Below, in pieces: positions 7,955 through 55,566 of a stretch of 64,000 nt of DNA; positions within the stretch are counted from its first letter, which is position 1; each line of letters starts with the position of its first letter. The DNA lies in NCBI GenBank assembly GCA_964057225.1, contig OZ059899.1, forward strand, positions 15,376,001 through 15,440,000, in the 5' to 3' direction. This DNA comes from Auanema rhodensis. Its lineage: Eukaryota > Animalia > Nematoda. The position numbers and the translations under genes are program-made. The notes under the pieces were generated by a model. The model had not been told where the DNA came from and made no database searches. It saw nothing but the letters and a program-made list of their open reading frames with translations.

Positions 7955-10402
7955 CTAATCGTCCAAGAAGAAGAATTGTCCGCTGCGCTTCTGTTCCACA
8001 TCCTTAACAGATTCCTTCTTGTTGATTCTTGGACGGTACGTCTCAGAATCTCTTCTAAAGGTGATGTCAAGCATTTTCAAGAATCTGTTCATTCCTTCTA
8101 ATAAGCTTTGTGGCCTAAAAAAACATTTCAATAAAAGAAGGCCTGAAGATTTTACGGACTTCTTAGCTGTAGCACACTTAGATGGTTCTCCCTCAAAGAC
8201 GATAACTCTATCGGCAAGATATGTAGCCATGATGAAATCGTGTTCGACGACAAAAGCAGTCTTCTTGCAATGCATGATGTATCTTAAACAAAAAATATAA
8301 AAAAGAATTAAACAAATCGATTTACCTCTTGATAACTTTAGCGGCATGAAGACGTTGTTCGGAGTCGAGGTAGGCAGAAGGCTCATCAATAAGGTATACT
8401 GAAGCAGTTTTACCGAGACAGAGAGCAAGGGCTACACGTTGCAGTTCTCCTCCAGACAAAGTTTGAACCTATAAAGATTAAAATATCAACAAGAAGTTGA
8501 TTTAAAATTATACGTCGCGATCCAACAAAGTCTCCATCATCAATGGATTCATTACGTCAGTCTTGAACTGAGGATGAGTGTACATATTGGAGATCTTTTC
8601 GTGCAAAAGATAACGAACCTAAAAGAAATGATATAAAACATACAAGTTTAGAAAAAAGTTACAGAATTGTCAGATTTTGGTGAAATTTTTTGTGGTTTGT
8701 ATGAAATGCTCATAGCGGGAAGTTCAACCTCTTCATCAGGTTTCAATGAACCAGCCAACATTCTGAAAACAAGACGATTCGTTAAAAATAAAAAGAAGTA
8801 AATGTACCTGATCATAGTTGTTTTACCGGTACCGTTCTCCCCAAGCATAACAATGATTTCAGAGTCACTGAAATCTCCGGCCTCAACAAAAAGTTGGAAA
8901 CCACCCAAATTCTTAGACATAGATGGGTACTGAAAGCAATATATGACGACATTTTACACCAATCATAACAAACCTGGAAGTGACCGGTTCTCTTTACTTC
9001 TTCAAGTTGATCAGCAACCTTGAAAGAAAGCTTATCCTCACTGAAAGAAAAACACAGTCAAAGTTTGAAATGAACTTAACTAACCGGAAACGCATGTTTT
9101 CTGTTGGGATGAAACCGTTCAAGAAAATGTTAATTCCTTCACGAACTCCAGATGGTAAAGTAACAACACCATAAACTCCTGGTACACCATAAAGCATACA
9201 AATGAAGTCAGACAAGTAATCAAGAACAGCCAAATCGTGTTCAACAACAATGATATAGCTAAAATTATTAATAATCACAACGTATTTGAAAAATGTAACT
9301 AACTTTGTCTCAGTCATAAGTTCACGGATAACAGCAGCAGCCTTCAGACGTTGCTTAACATCCAAGTAAGATGAAGGCTCATCGAACATATACACGTCAG
9401 CCTTTTGAACAACACACATGGCAATAGCAAAACGTTGGAGCTCTCCTCCAGAAAGCTGTTCAATTTGTCTTGTTAACACACCAGTTAATTCTGAAGTATC
9501 TGATTAACAAGACTTGTGAATATCTTTTCCTACCCATATCTTCTTGAACCTTGGTGATGTTAGCCATGTCATGCTTACGACACAGCAAGTCAGAAACGGT
9601 ACCCTTAGCAGCTCTGAGAGAGAATTAAATAATACAACAACATTATATGAACAGTACCTTGGAATTTGATCAACATATTGTGGCTTCACAACAGCCTTAA
9701 GATTATCTTCTAAAATCTTTGTGAAATAATTTTGAAGTTCAGATCCACGGAAGTGATTCAAAATGGTGGGCCAATCAGGAGGAGCCTGAAGAGAAGTTGA
9801 AATGCTGTTAACTTAAATTTACTAACATCAAATTGCCCAAGGTTAGGCTTCAGTTTTCCAGCAAGAACTTTCAAAGCAGTCGATTTTCCGATTCCGTTGG
9901 TTCCAACAAGACCAAGAACCTAATTTCGAATAAAAATACTGAGATACTGGAGAAAAAGTATTATACCTCTCCACGACGAGGAGTGGGGAGCCTGTGAAGC
10001 TTGAAAGAATTAGCAGAGTATCTATGAGTTGTTTCATTTGAAAGATTAGCAGGGAGATTGATAATTTTGATAGCATCGTAAGGGCATTTCTTTACACAAA
10101 TACCTACAAAATATAGATTCAAAAAGAGTAAATTATGTATACTTACCGCATCCAATGCAAAGAACTTCAGAAATGAATAGAATTGGTGAAGAAGTTTCTA
10201 CGACCATACATTGTTTACCTACAACAGTTACTATTACCATATGAAAAAAAAATAATATACCTTGTCTGTTAACTGGGCAAGATCTTTTGCATGGCAAACC
10301 ACAATTCTTTGGCTTACATCTATCCTTTTCAACAATAGCAATACGAGTAGGTGTACTTGTTTCGGCATTAGAAGCTAATGGCCCGCCTCTTTTAGAAGAC
10401 AT
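7955..10402 (-). CDS. abce-1: ABCE1/RLI1 ribosome-recycling Fe-S ABC ATPase (multi-exon)
   Basis: N-terminal Fe-S domain ([15 protein letters not shown]...[17 protein letters not shown]). Two nucleotide-binding domains: [12 protein letters not shown] / [11 protein letters not shown], and GENGTGKTT / [17 protein letters not shown]-terminus [11 protein letters not shown]. Confidence 0.98.
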
Positions 10403-11750: not shown

Positions 11751-14700
11751 TCATTCTATTTTTGCCCATTTAACAAAACTTGGGACGGTCCTTGATGGAA
11801 TATTTTGACTTGTAGCTTTAATACAGATTCCACGATCTTCCGATAAGAGGACTACGTTTCTATATATCGGAGGGCTATCTAACGATGGAAGAGCAACATC
11901 CGTAAACGATTGAACAGAGAAGTTTTCCACAAACGAAGTACAACTTTGTAATATTCTATCATCATTCACCTGAACCAATACTGTTCTTAATCGAAGAAAA
12001 ATCACAATATTTACCTTTCCCAATCCATAATCACCAATTTCTTCACTAACTATACATATGACCAACTTTTTGCCTTGTGTCGTCAGGGTATTCATTTTCG
12101 GACATTTTTCTTTGGCTTTCTCTTTAAGCCAAGCTATTGCTCTTTTAGCTTCTTCCCTGACAAACGTGCCATGCATACTAGAACTTTCTATTCCTTTATT
12201 TTGACTTAAACCAAGAAGTTCTTCGATTACTGAATAAATATAATTTTAAAGTATTGATCCACACTTTTTAAATTACCTATTGTAGGTATAATGATTTGGA
12301 ACCGGCCACATTCAACAAGCTTTTGAACTAGAGCAAGGTGATGAACAAAAGCATTAGTATCCAAAATAAGATTCAGGGGGCGCACAACGATTACAGCCTT
12401 TTGCTTGTTCTTTTCAAATTCTAGAAGTTCATCCCTTGTTCGATCAACTTCATCGCTTGTATCACTCTATAACAGAAAAAATAAATACATTTCGATAACG
12501 GAAATCTTACAGTTTTCGAATTTCCTCTCGATTTTGAAAGTTCTGTCTCAGTGTCCTCATCACGATTCCAATTATTACTACGAAACTCGGCAGCACTTTC
12601 ATCAAAATAGAAACTACTCAAGCAAGAACCATCGATATACTCGGAAGCAACAAGAAGATTTCGTAATCGTAGATGTAACTCAAGGGGAGCCTGAAAAATA
12701 TACCAAATATGAAATGAAAACAGATATCTGGAGAACTATAACTAACACGTTCTCCAGCTTCGCCAGGAAGATTAATTTCAGAAGTTTTTGGAACAGGTGA
12801 GAAAATGCTTAAGAAAGATGAAACAAAAACAAGTTCAGGAAGAACACATTGCTTACTATCTGAAAATATAGCCTTAGAGAATTAAAATTACGTTAAATCA
12901 TACTTTCTTCAGTTTCTAGCTTTCCTAATAAATTAGCATCTTCTAATTGAACAAGCTTATTGGCAATATCAGCAAGTTTTTCCCAAGTGTTCAGTTTAAC
13001 TGAATTAATAATAGATTAGTTTTATGATGAATATATATTATTAATTTACCAGTTTGAATAGGAAGTGGATCTACAGATGGCATGGTTCGATAAATATTTG
13101 AAGCATGAGGACAGGAAAGCCATTCAGAAACAATACCAATGGATGGAAGAACCCGTGATATCTGAAAAGAATTAATAATAACAGTAGTATGTTATGAATA
13201 GAACTTACCACTTTTGGTATAGGCTCTTCACCTTTCAAATATATAGATAGATTTCCTAATTCAGCATGTACAGGTTGAAGTAATGCTCCAAATAATGAAA
13301 TTACTGTTTGAACCGCCAGTTGTTGCTGAACAGAGCAGGTCCCAGGTTCACCTTAAAAACTAGTAAATTGAAGACTTACTTTGATTAAAAACATACTTTT
13401 TATGGCAGAAACATGAACAGCATATATAAGTATAAGTGACATTTGGATTAATTGGTTAGAAGTAATAGGTGAATTGGGAATTAGAACTAGCGCTGCTAAT
13501 TGAGAAATTGCTCTCTCTGAGACACTAGTGAAGTGCTCCATTCCAATTTTTGTAATTAGTAATCCAGCGGTATCAATAATATACGAAACAGTTCGCCGGA
13601 GAAGCTGAATTAATTATATTCACAATGTTAGGAGAAAGTGTACAAACCTGAGCTGGTTGTTGCTCTAAATAAACTTCAAAAATATTCGATGCTTGATCTG
13701 GAACTTCATGTATACCGTTCACAGCTACCCATATCTCCCGTGGTCTATCACGGCTAGCTGCGAGCTCAGATTCTCCTTGCACATGTCCTGCTTCGCTATC
13801 TAATACCCCTTCATACTTAGATACCTAGAAGATTATTTAGAAACTCGTGTATAATGTGTAAACTCAACCTTCTTCCGCATTGCAGCCAACCGAACAAATA
13901 GGCGATCTTTAGCAGCTTCAAATGAATGTGTTGCTGCCAGAGCACGAACACAGAAGAAAATTTCATCTAATACTCGAGTCTAAAATAAAGAAAATGAAAG
14001 ATGATTTGCAGTATTTATCAAATATATAGGTAGGAAAGATAGAAGCGGGAAAGCATTAAGCTAGGTAAGAAAGGTTCATTTAATTCTTAATGAACGGCAC
14101 GTTAGACAAGAGGCAGTGTAATTGGATGCTTGAAAGCAAGTGTCATACCGTACCAAATACACCGAAACACATCAACATGTGGTGTTACTAGAAATGAAAT
14201 AAAAATAATTTTAGTATCTATAATTAACATTGGTTAGATATAATCTACATTTAGGTTTATAGATTCTAATTGCAGTATTGTGATTTCGATCATTCTTTGT
14301 TTAAACGTGAACATTGAAGACCAGGAAACAGAGGGAAACATTACTGCATTAGTGATTAATAAAACTGTTGGTATTTGGGAAAACATGGTGTTCTAGAGCT
14401 TCTACGAAAAAAAGTGTGAGACAACACAAAACAGTCTTTAAGTTAGTCGTCGGCTGGTGCGAAGGAAACATATATTAATAGCAAGCAAAAGACGATGTGA
14501 AGAAAAAATTTCCAAAAAGAAGCCCCAGCATTCGAACAACTTAGAGAAAATCGTGAAGTAACGCAAAAAAGTGCAAGATCTTCAGACCTGTCTCTGATTG
14601 GAGAGAATCTGGATGGGGATATGGCGGGCACGGCGAGTGCTACGATACAGCATCTAGAAGGAACGAAGGTACGGTATGACAGAACATTAAAATCAAAAGA

Positions 14701-17700
14701 ATGAAACATTCCACTCAAACTATTGAAACAAGAGTTCCTGTCGAAAAGTTTCTCACTTTTAAACCTAATTTACTCCAACATTTTGAACTTTTCAAATTAA
14801 GTATCGCTAAAAAAAACAGTCAAACTTTAAGGCTTTAAAGGCCAGATGTTTAGTTTGATTCAAATTATATGAATTATGCCAAAGATTCCTATTAATATCA
14901 ATTAGTTTTAAGAATAAAAGCTCACTGAATAAAATGCAACAACAGCCAACTGATTATAAGAATGTCCAGATGACGGCCATAACAAAGAAGATTTCAGATA
15001 CCAGCTGAAATATATTTGATAAATGCGATGATTACCAACTTTCAACGATATATCAAAATACTTTGCAGAATATGAAAACAACAAAAGATGATATGTGGCA
15101 AGGAAGTGAAAAACAAAGTAGATTACATGATAATTACAAACATGTTTTAAAATACCTGCGAGCTAAGGAATAATCCTCGGATCCTTGTACGACACATTTA
15201 TATCTGTGCAAATCCCCCAAAGCAAGAACATGCCTTGAACATGATTTCACAGCAAACTTAAATAAGAAAACTATAAAATTAAGATAAAACTTTCATGTAT
15301 TACCTTCTGTTTCGATGTTAGATTTTGAGTAGGTAACGGAGACGGTAAAACACTACAAAAATCATCGCTTGGCAAGCCTGACGGCCAAACAATCTGTGTT
15401 GATAAGTTTATTTCGAAGTCTTCTTGGTATTTCGTAAGCAGCTTCTCATAAAAGCATATTCCCTTCAAGAAAAACGTTAAGAGGGTGAAGAAAAAACAAA
15501 TAATACGTTGACAATGTGCTCAACCATGATTCCCAAAACAGTTTTTGCGCCAGTTGCATTAGAGTTAGACGCCGTTTTCAAAGCATCAATGATCTAAAAT
15601 AAGTTTAAATTCAAGATTCCAACTTTTAACGATTACACAAACCTTATGAAAAGCTTGCTTCCAAAGGTGTTGTTCTAGATTCATACTGAAGGTGAAATTG
15701 ATATCTTTCGTTATGAATTCATAATAAATATCACAGAGATCCTGACTGTACACTATGACTTTCTTGGCAGCATCAACATCTCGCTTGGCCACTTTAGGCA
15801 AAATTTCGGTAATTGCATCGTTAATCTGAGATAACTTAGCTTTTTTCTCAGCATAACTAGCCATTTTGGCTGAATTTAAATTTTTAAATTTTCGCCTCGC
15901 GACGTCAACGCGTCGCGGTTGTAGTAGTATACCATAGAAACTGTACAGTATTTTGAAAATTTGATGAAAAAAGTTATTTTGTAGTTGATTATTACATTTC
16001 GAATTTTAATTTATAAATATTCATAACTTAGTATTATAAAATTATAAGAAAATAACTGTGAGAGTGAAACTAAATACTATTTTGAGTTCATTCAAATGGA
16101 ATATTTAAAATTTATATACTTTATTATGAGATATGTCTAAACCCCTATATACATTTCGCAGTGTGAGTTAATTTTAATGAAGGATTCAGATTCGATGATG
16201 AATCTTGCGAAAGAACAAACAAACGTCGTCACTAATACTACTCTCGTCCCAATTTTTACACACAAAAATCAACATTTAATACAGCAGATTTTGCTTTTTA
16301 ATGAACTTAAACATATTTTCTTACAGGTCAGAAGATTATTAATCATTCAATTAAATTGTTAATCTGATAATGTTTGAAGTTCAATTGATTTATAAAGCTT
16401 AAAAAGATCTTAAAATTTGATTCAGTAAGTTTTATCTTTTTTTGCTCTTTTATTAAGAAAATCAGTTCACCAAGTTCTGACGCCTGTAAAGTTTATGCAT
16501 TCCTTTTAAAATTATCTAATTTTATTTTCTTATATCATGATTTTTGTAATTTTTCTAGCCCAGTTTCAGTTCTAGACTCCGATTCACGTCAACCTGTAGT
16601 CTCGAATTTGTTCAATTTTTTCTTCAAGGTCGTGTAAAGAAAGAAAGACTGAATCCCAGATTTTCAAGAAAAGGTTAGCACTACCTTCTGCATCCTAGGT
16701 CCCTGGTCTTTCGATATCTGAGCATAGATGGGAAAATCAGAGATTTGCCGATCGTGGAGGGGCATCTCGTCGCTGTCCTCATGCTGTGCGGTAGTGTCCT
16801 TCTGTTTCGGTTCAGCAGCAGCAGAACTGCAACATTGACAGTTCGTACATAGAACTTTAAAATGAGAAAGCGGAGGTCCTTCCTCTCTCTGTGAGGCTAA
16901 CGTTTTAGAAGGATAAATGTCCTACTTACACCCCTACCACCTCTATTTGAATTGAATGTTGTGTTATGATAACAAGTGATATTTCTGAGAGAGAAAGACT
17001 CTCCGCGTTGTTTTTTTTATAATTTAATTGGTTAAAGTGAAGGGAAGATTGTGGGAAACGAGGTATACATGTATGGTTCCGGCATTAAAACACCACCGAC
17101 ATAGGTAGCAAAAGCTATCCCAGAAAAAAAAATTGCTAAGCAGTAACAAGCCATAGCTCCCAAAAGCATATACGATTTATTATTACTTGTGCTGAAACAC
17201 ACACATACACACAAGTTTGGACAACTTGCGATCTGCTTCGTCTACAAGGTTCTCTTAGAGAAAATAGAGACGGCTTGACTACAAGTATGAAAGGACATTA
17301 TTAAATGAAACACACAAGTAGAAGAGAACAATTTGAAAAAATGGATCAAGCAGTGGATAGTCTTTTGTTAAGCAAATGATTAAAATAACCAAAATGTTTC
17401 TTTTTATTCCATAGCTTTGTAGTATCAGATATCCAAAGCTTGAACCCACAATATAGAGAAGCCAGAGTTGACCCAAAATCAATAAAAGAATGCGAGTTAA
17501 CCGGCAATCAGCTAGTGAATTGACTAGGATATTTTCAAAAAATAGCTGGAATACAACATATCTAGAGCATAGAACAGAATACAAAATTAGTAGAAACCCA
17601 ATAAAAGATCAACCAAGATAAAACAACCAACAATGCAATTCACAGAGATTACATATGATGATCGGGATAACTGAGATTGTAAAACCACATACAAAATATA

Positions 17701-20272
17701 AAAATATCTACATAGGGTGAATAATGCAACAGCATTCTAGTTAATAATATAAAACTATAAAATTATGAAAGTTGAACCATTCTAAGTCTTATTAAAGTTA
17801 TTAAAGTATAAAATGTATAAAAAGCTAACAATATAAAAATTTCGAGGTTAAACTTGTGATTAAAACTTGGAGTAAAGAAAGGGGTGAATAGATATAGAGA
17901 GAAAGATAGAGGATTAGTAGAGTGCCGCATAAGAGAGGTAAGGAGTGCCCAGTGTCCATTAGAGGAATTTGCGGAAAAAAAATTCAAAATTTACCTTGCA
18001 GCAGTTCTGTTAGATTTCAGTACAGCTGGAGGACCGCGAATATCTTCTTCAAACAAGGATCTTCATTACCATACATATTGCTAACTACTGACCTTGTTGT
18101 CTAGGATGGTAAATTCTCTGGGATACTGGTCTACGACCACGATTATCAAAGTTTTCTTCATTATGATCCCTGTTAGGGAAAGTTAATCGACTCTTAAATC
18201 GGGAAGGAGGTGCATCGCCACGATCAAAGTCATGATCTCCTTTATACTTAGAAGAGTAGCCTCGTGAATCGGAATAACCATTAGGATCTACAACGAAAGA
18301 ATATACAGAGCTTCATGTTAGATTCAACTAACCATGATTTTCATGATATCTACCATTACGACCATTTTCATGCATACGATTAGACGTTCCATAAGTTTTT
18401 TTGTGTTGTCTCCCTCCTATAAAAATTTAAAAGATGACCAGGCGAACTCAAAATGTAAAACCTCGACTACTCCATTTCTTTTCCTCTCGTTCGAGTTCTT
18501 TAGTTGGTGTTTTTTCTCCGCTAGCAAGATCATCCTCACTCTCGTCTTCTTCAGCAATACTTTCACCGACAGATGAAGAACGGTCACTATCTGAAAAGGA
18601 TTTGATAAAAAACATTAGAAAAAGATGCAGTTTACCTCTACGCATACGTCCTCCCCGATTGTGCATTTTACCTCCACGTCCTCTCCAAGCCTGTTTAGGG
18701 GATTTGGCTCGATCTCTGACATTAACTCGAAGAATTCCGCGAACATTTGACAATTTCGAATCCCCACCAGATTCTTGCTCTTCCAACTCGCTTGCACAAG
18801 CTTCAAGTCTACAATTTTGAAAAAAAGATTAAGCATTCCCGTTCTAAAAACAAACGCACTTTTGTTGTAGTTCCTTTGCCTTTTCTTCCTCTTCTCTGCG
18901 AACCTTCTCATTATATTCTGCTTCCATCTTAAATTAGCGACATTTAATAAATAATTTTTTTAAAAAGTCTAACCTCTTCGCTCCAATTTATGGAACCGAG
19001 CGACTCAAAGGATTCGCAGATCTGACGATAAGTAAGGGACTGATCATCACTAGCTTGGCTTTGAGTCTCCAAACGGGCATCTGCAACGTGCTCCTAAAAC
19101 AAAATAAAATAAAGATATAATGCTAGAGATGTTATACCGGTGCAGGGGGTCGTTCACTTTGGGTACTATTTATAGAATCATTACGTCTTCGACCAGTTTG
19201 CCTCCGATGACCGGCTTCAGCTCGCATTGAAGCTCGTTCATTACCTTTAGGGGGCTAAACAACAAACTTTTAAGAGTAAGAAAAAAAAGACTAACCGCTC
19301 GTTGGAACCTTGAGCCAGGGGAAGAAAACTCTTGAAAATCTCTTCTAAAATCGTTTTTTCTGGGAGAACGATAGTCCAAATATCCGCCAGGTTTTCGACT
19401 GTCATACAAAGATTGCGTTGAATCCTATAAGTTTTAAACAACTATGAATACGAATTTAAAAAACACATACGTAAGGCTTTTGAGATCGATTATATCTAAC
19501 TTCACGGATATCATCTCTGCTTCCCTAAAGGAACAAACAAAAGAATAAAAAAGTTGAAACACATGACATACTTGTCTTGAAGACATCTGGGAACCATTTC
19601 GACTACTATAGTTGCTGTAAGCATCTTCATTATGGTGTCGAGAATCACTACAAAGAATATTAGGAACGTTAAATATTTATTAAAAACAAATCAAACCTGT
19701 TATCATGGCGTCTGTTTCCACCTCCACCGCCTCCCCTAACATAAGTCTTAGACCGAAAAGCATGTGAACTGGAAACAGATGCAGCATCGGGAGTTGTACT
19801 TCCAGAATCTCCTCTATCTATAAAAAGCAAAAAACATCAAAAACATAAATAAGGCAAATCTTACAGGAGTTTTGAGATTCAGAGTCGTTACTCTGTCGCC
19901 GGGTATTATCTAATTTTCGCCCTAAGTAAAGAAATAGCATTAAATTTATAAGAATGTAAATACTAACCAGAAAATCTACCATGTTCAGGTAGCTTATTAG
20001 GACGTTCTCTTACTAATTCAGTTGGAGGTTTCGAAGTGGGAGGAGGAACTCCCAGTGTTAAGTCAGTGCCTTTTCGAAGCATGCCTATGAGAGAAAATTT
20101 AAATAATTGCATGAAGATTTAGAAGAATGCTTATAGAAATATTTTTAAGCGAACAAGTGAAAATGAAATTACCTGGTCGATAAATTTGAATTTCGGGCCT
20201 AGGCTTACGAACACGAACTTCATCTCGTTGCTGCTGATTTTCGAACTTACACTCTTCGTCCTCATCCGGCAT
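11751..20272 (-). CDS. smg-6: SMG-6/EST1A NMD endonuclease (multi-exon, alternatively spliced)
   Basis: First exon MPDEDEE...RKPRPEIQIYRPG carries an EJC-binding motif. It is followed by an R/S/G/D-rich disordered region, then an EST1/14-3-3-like domain (LEQHLWKQAFHK, GDLHRYK, GHSYNQLAVV). The PIN domain retains the acidic residues (LILDTNAFV, VIEEL, NDDRILQSC, LLSEDR) and ends VPSFVKWAKIE*. Confidence 0.93.
14149..14187 (-). other. smg-6: Candidate poison or alternative last exon of smg-6 starting with an in-frame TAA
   Basis: atttcatttctag|TAA...GGTACG|gtatga. In phase 0 the first codon is a stop. Confidence 0.45.
14588..14653 (-). CDS. smg-6: In-frame 66-nt cassette exon of smg-6 (MLYRSTRRARHIPIQILSNQRQ)
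   Basis: Flanked by ttcgttccttctag| and |gtctga. Phase 0/0, matching the neighbouring exons (...VAFYS| and |TRVLDE...). No stop codons; GC-rich within an AT-rich intron. Confidence 0.65.
17032..17191 (-). CDS. smg-6: Candidate alternative last exon of smg-6 encoding a hydrophobic C-terminal transmembrane segment
   Basis: Canonical tttcag acceptor, phase 2, compatible with the upstream exon ending at 17995. Encodes STSNNKSYMLLGAMACYCLAIFFSGIAFATYVGGVLMPEPYMYTSFPTIFPSL*, with ATTAAA just downstream. Confidence 0.55.
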
Positions 20273-46568: not shown

Positions 46569-48847
46569 TCAGTCGTCCTGAAACTAATCTTCAAACCTTT
46601 GAACAAAACAACTTCAATTAATGATAATTAGACCATTAAGAAAACACTCAATAGGCTTGTATGCGCACTGTCAACAGATTTGCCACCTGGCTTCTTTAAT
46701 CAAATCTGTTCACCGATCACCTTCGTGACCTCATAAGCCGATATATTCCTGATTGATGATGGTATGGGTTACATCGTCACCAGCTAGCTAGGTTGCTTTT
46801 CAGCTTAACATATAATAGTATGTAATACACTCTTGCACTTCTACAGTAATAGCAAGATGTAGACGTAATTTGCCAGAAGCCATTACCTTCCAAAAGGTAT
46901 TGTCATGCTGTTGACTATATTTATCTTGGGTGGATGACTGCTAGTGTGAAAATGGAATTACTGGCATCTTGAGATGCTTAAACGACCCTTCGAACATGTG
47001 TCAGAGCTTTCTGTCATGTCAATACTCGCCAACTGTTGGACTAACTCACTGAATAGAGAGAGAGGAATATTGAATAGATAGATATGAGAAGAAGATATGT
47101 ATATATATATACTTCATCTAATTAATCATCTTAACAATATTTGAGACTTTTGCGTTGGGGCATCATTCAATGTAGTGGAAGCATTGGCTTTCCATATGAT
47201 GCATCCGTCTTAGAAGATTCGAAGCTGTTAGATATGTAGAGATATATACATATCTTTGAATACACTATAACATAATTATAATCTTCGTTCTTTCATAAAA
47301 CATCCCAAAAGCATTCCCTCCTGGCTTGTTGGACTGATTCATAACCTGACTGACAGCTTGTCAGCTTTTGTACTTCTATATGCATCTTAAAAATGCTGAA
47401 ACATCTAACTATATTAAACTAAAAAAGGTTTTTAATTGTAACTTTATCATTGGTAGAGCTTGGCATCCTCCAAAAATAGATAAGGCTCTTATCAGCATAA
47501 AAAAAAGCCAAAAATATAGTATAAAGCTAGAGCATTATGAACGGATATGCGCGAGGATCAATGAGTTTCATCGCAAACGAACACAATTCACGAGATCAGT
47601 TAGCTTTATCATCAAATCTGGACTGAATAAAACGATTACATACATATAAACTATTTTAAATTGTTATTTGAATTTATTAATTCGGAAATTACATCATCAT
47701 ACCACATGAGAATAAGCGAAAACTTCGAACTAGCCTATATGAGAAGATAATTAAGAGAAAAGCCCATTCCGTTGTCAGTCATATAATCTCTAACGTACTC
47801 ATCGATAAGGCGAACACCCAATCATACAATGCAATTGATTTTTATACCCGAAAAGGGCAACTACCGTGTTTTGCGCTAGATAAGAATGTGGCGGGTAATG
47901 ATAATGAACTGAGAAACCTTTAACTAACTGTCTCAAAACTCTTTTTAATAGAAGATATTTATAAGAATTATATGCTTAATTAAGAAGCTTTCATCATCAT
48001 ATATACAAATTTATAATGTTAATATTACATTATGATTTGTATGTTTTTTTCGTATCTAGCTTATACAAGAAAGCATCAGATGAATGGAGAAGCATAACTA
48101 TATATCAAACAATAATGGCTCTTTTAAAGCTCTGTGATTCTTAATTTGGTTATCTCTCCGTCATTATCCTTCGTTTCCTGCTATTCTCATGATCTCCTCT
48201 TCCATCATTTGCATCTACTCTCCCGCGCTCTCCTATACGCTCTCGTTGACTCTGTCTCTATGGAATCAGTAATGAGGTCTGGATGACAATGAGGACTTAA
48301 GCAGCCATCTGATGTATTTCTGCATGAACGTCAACTCTCCTTTTTCTCTCAACCCTCTTCAGTTTCCTGGGTATTAGTGGAGACCTTGTTTGTTTCATTG
48401 ATCTTCTCTAACTTTTTCAGAACATATACCTCTGTCACTTAGAGTATTGCAACTATTCATATTTCCTATACGTATCTACTATTCATATTGAACAACCCTT
48501 TCATCATTATATTGTATATGGCTCCAAGTATTTCCGTACCTGCTATGATATACTCCTTAGTTGCCTATTTGAGTTTCATTGGATTAGGCCAGATGTGATT
48601 AAATCCGTACATGACACTACCAATCGCAAACAATAAGCCAATAGCTGCATTGGTTTTTCACAAATGATAGAAACCGAAAAGGCAAATATATCTCTTCTCT
48701 TTTTCAAAGTGCAAATCAAGCCAAAATCAATAATTAAGAAAATTAATTACACTAGGACTTATTAATAGGACAGTCTCTCTCAGCTAAACTATTTGTGTGC
48801 ATGTTCATTATAATATTTCATGTGATAAAGGCTTAGCTGATCAATGT

Positions 48848-54302: not shown

Positions 54303-55566
54303 GGCTGAAAAATTAAAAAGGAATTGACAAAGTTGATAAAGAAGTAAGAGACAGATACGACATGAAAGAACAGAAGTAGTTCAAATTATATTAAATTTTC
54401 CTTTAGGTTCTGAGAATAATCTCTGAAAATCACCTAGAATATATCGGAACATTTTTAAAAAGGGTTTCACAAATTGCGTTTACTTATAATATGTTAAATA
54501 AATAAAATTATATATAAATTAAAAATTAGAGTTAGATTGTTGGAAATAAGAATCAAGCAGAGATGTGGAGCTAAATAGAACAATCAGCTAAGAGCTTACT
54601 GGCTCAGAAGAAGACTAAGGATAAGAATACTTTCCAAGATTTTATATTAGAAGATGGCAGTCTTATTTTATTAATAGGTCAAAAGAAGTAATCAAAGGCG
54701 GGAAAAGAAAAATATATGATTGAATCAATATATTTATTTTCCTGAATACCTGTAAATACATTACAGTAGAATAAAAAATTGGAAATCACACTTTATAATG
54801 ATACGCAGCTAAGAAGTATCGTTGTTGAATTCAAAATGTCTATTTACAGATTTCTTAATTACCAGCTTTGTTCATGATGATTTCTTTTTTTCTTCCAGGT
54901 TTCTTCTAGTTTTTAAAAGCTATATCATTGCCTATGCTATACATATTGTTTCTACAAAATAAAGTGTATAGTATCATCCAATTTTTATTATTTTGAATGT
55001 TTTTGAAAGATTTTTAACCATGCAATAGTAATTAAATCGGAGATAAATCTTCAGGGAATTACAAATATGAACAAAGATACCTGTAAACAACTTGTGTGGC
55101 TGCCGGTTTTTATGATAAAAATAAATAGAACTAGTGAAGAATATTCAACTGATTATAAATAAAAATTTGAAAAAATTAGGGACTGATCTATATCTCTACA
55201 TTCTTATAAAATATTCTTTATTATATTGCTTGTTGTTTCATATTTAATGCTTAAAGATTCAAATAAATTTCAAAACAGTCGTAAAACCTAAAAAAAACTT
55301 TTATGATATAATCTAAGCAGATGTACATATGCAATACTGCCTAACAGATCTTTTTTATAAAAAATTTGGAAAGGTATGACTAGTTATCTGGAAAATGGAA
55401 ATGAAATGAATAAATCTATATCTAAAAATTTCTCTCTGAATATATCAACCCGATACTCTTAACTATGCTGTTTGAGCAAATTTTGACAAGTTAAATGCGA
55501 TAAAGCAAAAATAATGAATCTCTTGTTTTCACCGTATATTCTGATTCAATCATATGGGCAAGGTTT

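What the first reader, a model, noticed from the sequence alone, without database searches (positions are those of the whole stretch)
13981..14924. Structured splicing switch in an smg-6 intron: a 14-bp long-range helix ties a coding cassette exon to a stop-codon exon
Seen: most smg-6 introns are about 45 nt, but this one is about 945 nt. It holds an in-frame 66-nt exon A (14653-14588) and a 39-nt exon C (14187-14149) that begins with an in-frame TAA. Positions 14668-14681 (ggtacggtatgaca) and 14141-14154 (tgtcataccgtacc) are a perfect 14-nt inverted repeat about 510 nt apart. In the pre-mRNA one arm abuts the acceptor of exon A, and the other covers both candidate donors of exon C (G|gtacgg and G|gtatga). 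Known: NMD factors are feedback-regulated by NMD, and long-range docking/selector pairing controls exon choice in Drosophila Dscam. Inference: this is an RNA-structure-controlled AS-NMD autoregulatory circuit for the NMD nuclease itself, and it is the best candidate for an undescribed system in this window.
Basis: partly seen in the sequence, partly recalled or inferred. Interest (0 to 1): 0.82.

Follow-up and report, generated by a model that had tools for sequence, protein, structure and literature searches.

The report
Helix bracketing a conserved smg-6 exon
The long smg-6 intron holds an ancient, already annotated 22-amino-acid optional exon, bracketed in this nematode by a perfect 14-base RNA helix that probably favours skipping it. 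The proposed stop-codon exon and NMD feedback circuit have no support.

Summary
The sequence observation holds. The perfect 14-nt inverted repeat, exon A and "exon C" are where stated.

Exon A (14653-14588) is real. The same 66-nt in-frame exon (MLYRS..RRAR..P...LS..RQ) lies in the orthologous intron of eight other clade V nematodes. It is annotated as an optional +/-22 aa insert in C. briggsae, C. brenneri, C. bovis and H. contortus, and is present in a C. elegans RefSeq isoform. The "long intron" is therefore two introns (272 and 608 nt) around a known cassette exon. Its inclusion keeps the frame, so it does not trigger NMD.

RNA contigs show the skip form as the main mRNA. Indirect signs point to low-level exon A use. 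The intron is covered at about 10-15% of exon depth.

Exon C has no RNA support and is not conserved. It is one of many stop-bearing pseudo-exons in the intron.

The helix is unlikely by chance within this intron (P about 0.003) and is predicted to form (pair probability about 1). Its upstream arm covers positions -28 to -15 before exon A. It is not seen in the other species, and neither arm has a competing partner.

Best reading: a lineage-specific loop-out helix that biases splicing towards skipping (about 0.5). It is not a Dscam-like switch and not an AS-NMD circuit.

The parts
13980..14925 (-). Intron removed in the main (skip) mRNA: 946 nt, GT..AG, phase 0
   Evidence: Sequence. The X3 contig of 3052 nt has exactly 714 nt between its pieces at 15643-15825 and 13395-13604. 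That equals the exons with neither A nor C.
14926..15004 (-). Upstream constitutive exon (79 nt, ends ..NQLAVVAFYS)
   Evidence: Joints and contig ends. Alignment to SMG-6 orthologues.
13869..13979 (-). Downstream constitutive exon (starts TRVLDEIFFCVRAL..)
14654..14925 (-). Intron 1 (272 nt) when exon A is included
   Evidence: Follows from the exon A boundaries.
14588..14653 (-). Exon A: conserved 66-nt in-frame cassette exon encoding MLYRSTRRARHIPIQILSNQRQ
   Evidence: - The same exon lies in the orthologous intron of 8 other species.
- Identity by codon position is 0.76/0.82/0.42.
- It is annotated as an optional +/-22 aa insert elsewhere.
- X1 contigs break exactly at 14588 with a 30-nt overlap.
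13980..14587 (-). Intron 2 (608 nt) when exon A is included. Reading through it gives ..QRQ-V-stop.
   Evidence: Colinear low-depth contigs cover 13952-14617 in X1 and 13952-14501 in X2.
14668..14681 (-). 5' arm of the helix (UGUCAUACCGUACC in the RNA), at -28 to -15 before exon A
14141..14154 (-). 3' arm of the helix (GGUACGGUAUGACA in the RNA), 433 nt after exon A and 161 nt before the final acceptor
14149..14187 (-). "Exon C": a stop-bearing pseudo-exon with no support for use
   Evidence: The sequence is present. There is no spliced contig and no extra depth. It is not conserved. It is one of 18 comparable pseudo-exons.
15010..15024 (-). 5' arm of a second, outer perfect 15-nt AU-rich complement, 5 nt before the acceptor of exon 15004-14926
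14013..14027 (-). 3' arm of the outer complement, 33 nt before the final acceptor at 13980

Best explanation
Shown:
- The 946-nt intron of this clade V nematode's smg-6 gene is two introns flanking an ancient optional exon.
- Exon A adds 22 residues to a loop of the 14-3-3-like/TPR domain, right after the NQLA helix, and keeps the reading frame.
- In this organism the exon-skipped mRNA is the main form.

Inferred:
- A perfect 14-bp helix (duplex energy -23.5 kcal/mol) pairs positions -28 to -15 upstream of exon A with a site 433 nt downstream of it.
- This loops out exon A and hides the region where its branch point and U2AF binding are expected. It also shortens the effective distance between the constitutive splice sites.
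- The helix thereby biases splicing towards skipping, and may slow removal of these introns.
- It looks like a lineage-specific modulator laid over a much older alternative exon. It is neither a multi-partner switch nor an NMD sensor.
For: - Exon A is conserved in 8 other species, with a coding pattern of substitutions.
- It is annotated as an optional +/-22 aa insert.
- The helix is perfect, with P about 0.003 between the two flanking introns.
- Its pair probabilities are 0.99-1.0 for 13 of 14 pairs (0.69 for the terminal one), and it appears in both the MFE and the centroid fold.
- The arms are isolated matches. The sequence between them shows no extended inverted similarity, and they enclose an ancient exon, so they are not a transposon or a decayed duplication.
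- A second, nested perfect 15-nt complement lies in the same 1.2 kb. Two such repeats never arose in 20000 shuffles.
- Skip form is dominant: the X3 contig arithmetic fits it exactly, and the skip junction has residual depth about 26 against about 4 for the exon A junction in X1.
- This intron carries 10-15% of exon depth, while the 859-nt smg-6 intron carries none.
Against: - No comparable helix was found between the flanking introns in T. colubriformis, A. costaricensis, C. bovis, C. auriculariae, C. nigoni or D. pachys.
- The Pristionchus candidates rest on a motif that is about 8-fold over-represented across the whole locus.
- The exon is alternative in species that lack the helix, so the helix is not needed for alternative splicing.
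- Real sequence in this window has about 7 times more long inverted repeats than shuffles, and the finding was picked after the fact.
- The intron as a whole is not unusually structured (z = -0.96).
- There is no structure probing, no mutagenesis and no close relative to test covariation.
Confidence: 0.5

Rival explanations
1. The 14-nt complement is a chance or neutral match with no measurable effect. Exon A is controlled only by its weak sites (TAG acceptor, GTCTGA donor) and by protein factors that bind the flanks, as in the species without a helix.
For: - Not conserved in 8 other species.
- Inverted repeats are in excess across the window.
- The weak yTAG acceptor is conserved in 7 of the 9 species (D. 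pachys and C. nigoni have CAG). Two strongylids also conserve 40 nt upstream of the exon, which suggests protein-binding control.
- Overall intron fold z = -0.96.
Against: - P about 0.003 within this intron.
- One arm sits exactly in the branch/polypyrimidine zone of a validated alternative exon.
- A -23.5 kcal/mol perfect duplex is hard to leave unformed.
- A second nested perfect complement lies nearby.
Confidence: 0.38
2. The helix is a safeguard. It masks the donor-like GGUACGGUAUGA cluster so that the pseudo-exon behind the good acceptor at 14188 is never spliced in.
For: - The 3' arm covers both GT dinucleotides.
- No exon C is seen in RNA, which is what a working mask would give.
Against: - Many other pseudo-exons in the intron have equal or better sites and no mask.
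- Point mutations of the donors would be a simpler evolutionary fix.
- Absence of exon C is equally expected if it is simply not an exon.
Confidence: 0.08
3. An RNA-structure switch chooses between coding exon A and stop-codon exon C, giving an AS-NMD feedback loop for the NMD nuclease.
For: - The sequence elements exist as described.
- NMD would lower the steady-state level of exon C transcripts, so their absence in wild-type RNA is not decisive.
- Retained-intron forms of this region do carry early stops.
Against: - No joint, contig break or extra depth at exon C in four runs.
- Exon C is not conserved, whereas exon A is.
- There is no alternative pairing partner to make a switch.
- SMG-6 is not known to act on splicing (my own knowledge). 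Stabilising an unproductive isoform would not restore SMG-6 protein, so the loop is not homeostatic.
Confidence: 0.04

Closest known systems
The optional 22-aa exon of nematode smg-6, annotated in C. elegans NP_001040885.1, in C. briggsae isoform pairs 1243/1221 and 1264/1242 aa, in C. bovis 1246/1224 aa, and in H. contortus and N. americanus
   Same: - Same intron position and phase, and same 66-nt length.
- 64-73% peptide identity to the five orthologous exons scored by tblastn, against 33-50% for the whole protein.
- Same ATG...CAG|GT ends.
   Different: - Here the gene is unannotated.
- The skip form dominates in the available RNA.
- Intron 1 is longer than in C. nigoni (272 against 81 nt), and the acceptor is TAG rather than CAG.
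Long-range intronic base pairing that loops out an exon or brings splice sites together: Drosophila long-range structures (PMC2724269) and human conserved complementary regions (PMC8052449)
   Same: Two complementary boxes in the introns on either side of an alternative exon, hundreds of nucleotides apart. One box overlaps a splice-signal region.
   Different: Those cases were defined by conservation or covariation and partly tested by mutagenesis. Here the pairing is seen in one species only and is untested.
Docking-site/selector-sequence competition in mutually exclusive exon clusters (Dscam type; PMC4691838, PMC6071210)
   Same: Long-range intronic RNA pairing placed next to an acceptor.
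   Different: - There is no cluster of exclusive exons.
- There is one pair of boxes only. No competing partner exists at up to 2 mismatches in 64 kb.
- No docking site is conserved.
Poison-exon AS-NMD autoregulation (SR proteins and other splicing factors), and NMD-factor feedback through NMD-sensitive mRNAs (reviewed in PMC4770240)
   Same: The gene encodes an NMD factor, and unspliced forms of this region carry early stops.
   Different: - No included poison exon was detected.
- The candidate is not conserved.
- The protein is not a splicing regulator.
- The real alternative exon is in frame.
Zipper stems of long yeast introns, which shorten the distance between 5' splice site and branch point
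   Same: A stem inside an unusually long intron, in a genome of short introns, that shortens the effective intron from 946 to about 420 nt.
   Different: Here the stem encloses a functional alternative exon, so shortening and exon skipping are the same act.

Membership tests
Conserved nematode smg-6 22-aa cassette exon | Lies in the orthologous phase-0 intron directly after the ..YNQL(A/G)..(Y/F)(S/Q) helix of the EST1/14-3-3-like domain | tested here: met
   Protein alignment. tblastn of flanking exons and exon A in 8 loci.
Conserved nematode smg-6 22-aa cassette exon | 66 nt, open in frame, peptide MLYRS.RR....P...LS..RQ, under coding selection | tested here: met
   Mean pairwise peptide identity 72%. 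Identity by codon position 0.76/0.82/0.42.
Conserved nematode smg-6 22-aa cassette exon | Both the included and the skipped mRNA exist | tested here: inconclusive
   - The skip form is shown directly by the X3 contig.
- Inclusion is only inferred, from the X1 contig break at 14588 and from X1 and X2 contigs ending at 13952. That end point is expected if a path ending in ..AG joins 13979.
- X2 has depth over exon A but none over intron 1.
- The joints themselves were among rows not printed.
- Both forms are annotated in other species.
Long-range intronic pairing that loops out a cassette exon | Complementary boxes in the two introns flanking the exon, stable enough to form | tested here: met
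   14/14 Watson-Crick pairs at -23.5 kcal/mol. Pair probability is 0.99-1.0 for 13 of them and 0.69 for the terminal pair, within 946-nt and 1301-nt contexts.
Long-range intronic pairing that loops out a cassette exon | Pairing conserved or covarying in related species | tested here: not met
   No significant helix in 6 species. The two Pristionchus candidates (P 0.01 and 0.05) are confounded by a motif abundant across the locus. All available species are distant (at most 50% SMG-6 identity), so a young helix is not excluded.
Long-range intronic pairing that loops out a cassette exon | Disruptive and compensatory mutations change and restore the splicing ratio | not testable with these tools
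   Needs a minigene or genome editing.
Docking/selector competing structures (Dscam type) | Array of mutually exclusive exons, each with a selector complementary to one docking site | tested here: not met
   There is a single cassette exon. Only two copies of the box occur in 64 kb at up to 2 mismatches.
AS-NMD poison exon | A stop-bearing exon is spliced into some mRNAs | tested here: not met
   - Zero residual depth in the bin holding exon C in all four runs.
- No cover of exon C in X3 and X4.
- Colinear contigs pass it without a break in X1 and X2.
- Wild-type RNA only, so a rare NMD-cleared form is not excluded.
AS-NMD poison exon | The poison exon and its flanks are conserved | tested here: not met
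   Exon A, plus short flanks, is the only conserved block of the orthologous introns.
AS-NMD poison exon | The isoform rises when NMD is blocked | not testable with these tools
   No NMD-deficient data exist for this organism.
MITE or other transposon with terminal inverted repeats | Target-site duplication, further copies, and non-host interior | tested here: not met
   The flanks differ (..gttc / cttg..). There are no other copies in the window. The interior holds the ancient exon A.

The most novel reading that the evidence does not exclude
Two nested perfect long-range helices (14 bp inner, 15 bp outer) form a lineage-specific RNA scaffold. The scaffold sets how often an ancient SMG-6 cassette exon is used and how fast the flanking introns are removed. 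That exon remodels a loop of the 14-3-3-like domain, which in human SMG6/SMG7 binds phosphorylated UPF1. Structure would then tune both the SMG-6 protein isoform and the share of stop-bearing, NMD-sensitive retained-intron smg-6 transcripts.
Probability: 0.1. Interest if true: 0.6.

Novelty: new member of a known kind. Interest (0 to 1): 0.33.

Why it matters
- The exon. This analysis puts a nematode-specific, deeply conserved optional insert on record. It sits in the SMG-6 domain homologous to the phospho-UPF1-binding domain of human SMG6/SMG7. It is annotated in several species, but no paper found in five full-text searches discussed it. Its function is an open and easily testable question in C. 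elegans.
- The helix. If it acts, it would be a clean natural example of a young RNA structure retuning an old splicing choice, in a genome whose introns are otherwise about 45 nt.
- The NMD-feedback idea.

Tried and rejected
- Rfam on 13800-15100 gave nothing near threshold. A 24-bit mir-190 hit in the neighbouring 151-nt intron has no hairpin support (z = -0.23).
- Transposon or MITE origin was rejected. There is no target duplication and no other copy, and the ancient exon lies inside.
- A decayed large inverted duplication was rejected. There is no similarity between the arms' neighbourhoods.
- The shared ACCGTA/TACGGT core with Pristionchus first looked like covariation. It was dropped because the motif occurs 79 times in the 29.6-kb P. 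pacificus locus, on both strands.
- RNAduplex of the 60 nt before exon A against intron 2 was not significant in the five other species tested.
- Fetching closer relatives failed. No protein nearer than about 50% identity exists in the searched collections. Look-ups of P0006, P0103, P0100 and P0001 found no locus.
- An AlphaFold model of the insert-bearing domain was of low confidence (mean pLDDT 49) and was not used.
Exon A junctions could therefore only be inferred from contig ends and depth arithmetic.
Full report
**Observation**

On the minus strand the intron runs from 14925 (GTGAGC) to 13980 (TTTTAG). It is 946 nt long and phase 0. It lies between an exon ending ..GHSYNQLAVVAFYS and an exon starting TRVLDEIFFCVRAL...

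RNA contigs confirm 16 smg-6 introns in the laid stretch. Twelve are 43-56 nt, and the others are 151, 859 and 946 nt. A further intron, 16829-17996, follows from a contig's loose end.

The 66-nt exon A (14653-14588), the 39-nt "exon C" (14187-14149, starting with TAA) and the perfect 14-nt inverted repeat are all as described. The repeat arms are 14141-14154 and 14668-14681, with 513 nt between them. The 5' arm ends 14 nt before exon A. The 3' arm covers both GT dinucleotides.

**Chance**

A Watson-Crick run of 14 or more between the two flanking introns arose in 0.27% of 3000 shuffles, and in 0.4% of shuffles of the whole intron. Two caveats apply. The window has four such repeats within 1 kb against about 0.6 expected. 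The finding was also chosen after reading 64 kb.

**The gene and the organism**

The exons encode SMG-6, with EST1/14-3-3-like and PIN domains. The nearest proteins found are:
- Heterorhabditis bacteriophora, 50% identity
- Trichostrongylus colubriformis, 48%
- Caenorhabditis species, 39-41%
- Pristionchus, 33%

The source is therefore a clade V nematode without close relatives in the searchable protein collections.

**Exon A is real, old and already annotated**

In the protein alignment, C. bovis SMG-6 carries a 22-residue insert at exactly this intron position. It is 16/22 identical to the translation of exon A.

tblastn then found the same 66-nt open exon inside the orthologous intron of eight species: T. 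colubriformis, A. costaricensis, C. bovis, C. auriculariae, C. nigoni, Diploscapter pachys, P. pacificus and P. mayeri. Seven of the nine species, this one included, have ..yTAG|ATG...CAG|GT ends. D. pachys and C. nigoni have a CAG acceptor.

Pairwise identity by codon position is 0.76/0.82/0.42, the signature of selection on the peptide. The exon is the only block of these introns conserved across species. The two strongylids share it 66/66, plus about 40 nt upstream.

Public annotations carry it in C. elegans NP_001040885.1. They carry both forms (+/-22 aa) in C. briggsae, C. brenneri, C. bovis and H. contortus. Human SMG6 (4UM2) and SMG7 (1YA0) lack the insert. It falls between the NQLA helix and the next helix of the 14-3-3-like domain.

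None of the papers I searched discusses this exon.

**RNA evidence in this organism**

Four runs of one 2019 study hold the locus as spliced contigs.

- In X3 one 3052-nt contig crosses the region. The 714 nt between two of its listed pieces equal the exons with neither A nor C, so the skip form is the main mRNA.
- In X1, X2 and X4 the main contigs stop exactly at 14926 and 13979, which shows branching there.
- Low-depth colinear contigs cover the intron at about 10-15% of exon depth. The 859-nt intron of the same gene has zero depth. These introns are therefore specifically under-spliced or retained.
- Retained forms meet early stops: ..AFYS-VSFYS-stop in intron 1, and ..QRQ-V-stop in intron 2.

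Three details point to use of exon A:
1. In X1 two contigs overlap by 30 nt and break exactly at 14588, the predicted last base of exon A.
2. In X1 and X2 the unspliced contigs end at 13952, not 13950. That is expected only if another path ending in ..AG (exon A ends ..CAG) joins 13979.
3. X2 has substantial unexplained depth over exon A but none over intron 1.

Residual depth suggests about 26 for the skip junction against about 4 for the exon A junction in X1. These are inferences. Three joints and 64 pieces were not printed, and the tool allowed only one call.

**Exon C**

The depth bin holding exon C is fully explained by colinear contigs in all four runs. X3 and X4 do not cover it at all, and no contig breaks at its ends. 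It is not conserved. Loose splice-site criteria give 18 pseudo-exons of 25-150 nt in this intron, every one with an in-frame stop. Nothing marks exon C as an exon. A rare form cleared by NMD cannot be excluded from wild-type RNA.

**The helix**

- The duplex energy is -23.5 kcal/mol.
- Pair probabilities are 0.99-1.0 for 13 of 14 pairs within the intron alone and within 1301 nt of context. The terminal pair is at 0.69.
- The helix appears in both the MFE and the centroid structures.
- The intron as a whole is not unusually stable (z = -0.96).

The arms are isolated. There is no further inverted similarity between their neighbourhoods and no other copy in the window. They enclose the ancient exon. 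This rules out transposon ends or a decayed duplication.

A second perfect complement of 15 nt (AU-rich, -12.4 kcal/mol, pair probability 0.36) is nested outside the first. Its arms are 15024-15010, 5 nt before the acceptor of the upstream exon, and 14027-14013, 33 nt before the final acceptor. Two such repeats in 1181 nt never arose in 20000 shuffles.

**Conservation of the helix**

The longest complement between intron 1 and intron 2 is unremarkable in T. colubriformis, A. costaricensis, C. bovis, C. auriculariae, C. nigoni and D. pachys. So is the duplex formed by the 60 nt before exon A, in the five other species tested.

P. pacificus and P. mayeri have ACCGTA boxes upstream and TACGGT boxes downstream that share a core with the arms here. 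However, this near-palindromic motif is about 8-fold enriched over the whole Pristionchus locus, on both strands. I do not count it as conservation.

All comparison species are distant, so a young helix remains possible. The helix is clearly not required for alternative use of the exon.

**Mechanism**

The helix hides positions -28 to -15 before exon A, where branch-point and U2AF recognition are expected. That placement rests on established knowledge of 3' splice-site recognition and was not tested here. The helix also loops out the exon and cuts the effective intron from 946 to about 420 nt.

The simplest expectation is less exon A inclusion, which fits the dominant skip form. It may also slow splicing, which would fit the intron cover. 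I put this at about 0.5, and a neutral chance match at about 0.38.

A Dscam-like docking/selector system is excluded, because there is neither an exclusive exon array nor a competing partner.

**Verdict**

The interesting exon is known from annotation, the poison exon is unsupported, and the helix is a plausible but unproven, species-limited example of a known kind of splicing control.

Noticed in passing
window 15010-15024 and 14013-14027: A second perfect inverted repeat (15 nt, ATTTATCAAATATAT) is nested outside the 14-nt one. Each arm lies just upstream of an acceptor: of exon 15004-14926 and of exon 13979. If it paired, it would loop out the 79-nt constitutive exon as well.
   Followed up: partly
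window 16829-17996, contigs from about 17160 to beyond 17600: This 1168-nt smg-6 intron holds a separate transcript at 2-3 times the depth of smg-6. smg-6 contigs splice across it, from 16828 to 17997.
   Followed up: partly
window 15826-16684: The 859-nt smg-6 intron has zero RNA depth in all four runs, unlike the 946-nt intron. I did not check whether it hides conserved elements.
   Followed up: no
L005 (P. pacificus) and L006 (P. mayeri), whole loci: The near-palindromic motif TAC(C/G)GTA, often as GAGGTACGGTAGG or CTACCGTAATC, is about 8-fold over-represented in the introns of the Pristionchus smg-6 locus on both strands. Six copies lie in the 322-nt intron before exon A.
   Followed up: partly
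L001 15721-15829 and L004 16138-16242: T. colubriformis and A. costaricensis share exon A 66/66 at the nucleotide level, plus about 40 nt of upstream intron at about 90% identity. The rest of the intron does not align. This points to RNA-level constraint on the exon's acceptor region in strongylids.
   Followed up: partly
window 14998-15072: Weak Rfam hit to mir-190 (24 bits against a gathering score of 48) in the 151-nt intron. Folding shows no significant hairpin, so I treat it as spurious.
   Followed up: yes
window 47092-47257 and 54714-55556: The only other perfect inverted repeats of 14 nt or more within 1 kb in this window: AGATATGTATATAT (low complexity) and ATATGATTGAATCA. Their gene context was not examined.
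   Followed up: no
window 8994-10402, minus strand: ORFs with ABC-ATPase and iron-sulfur cluster motifs, which look like the ABCE1/RLI orthologue next to smg-6.
   Followed up: no
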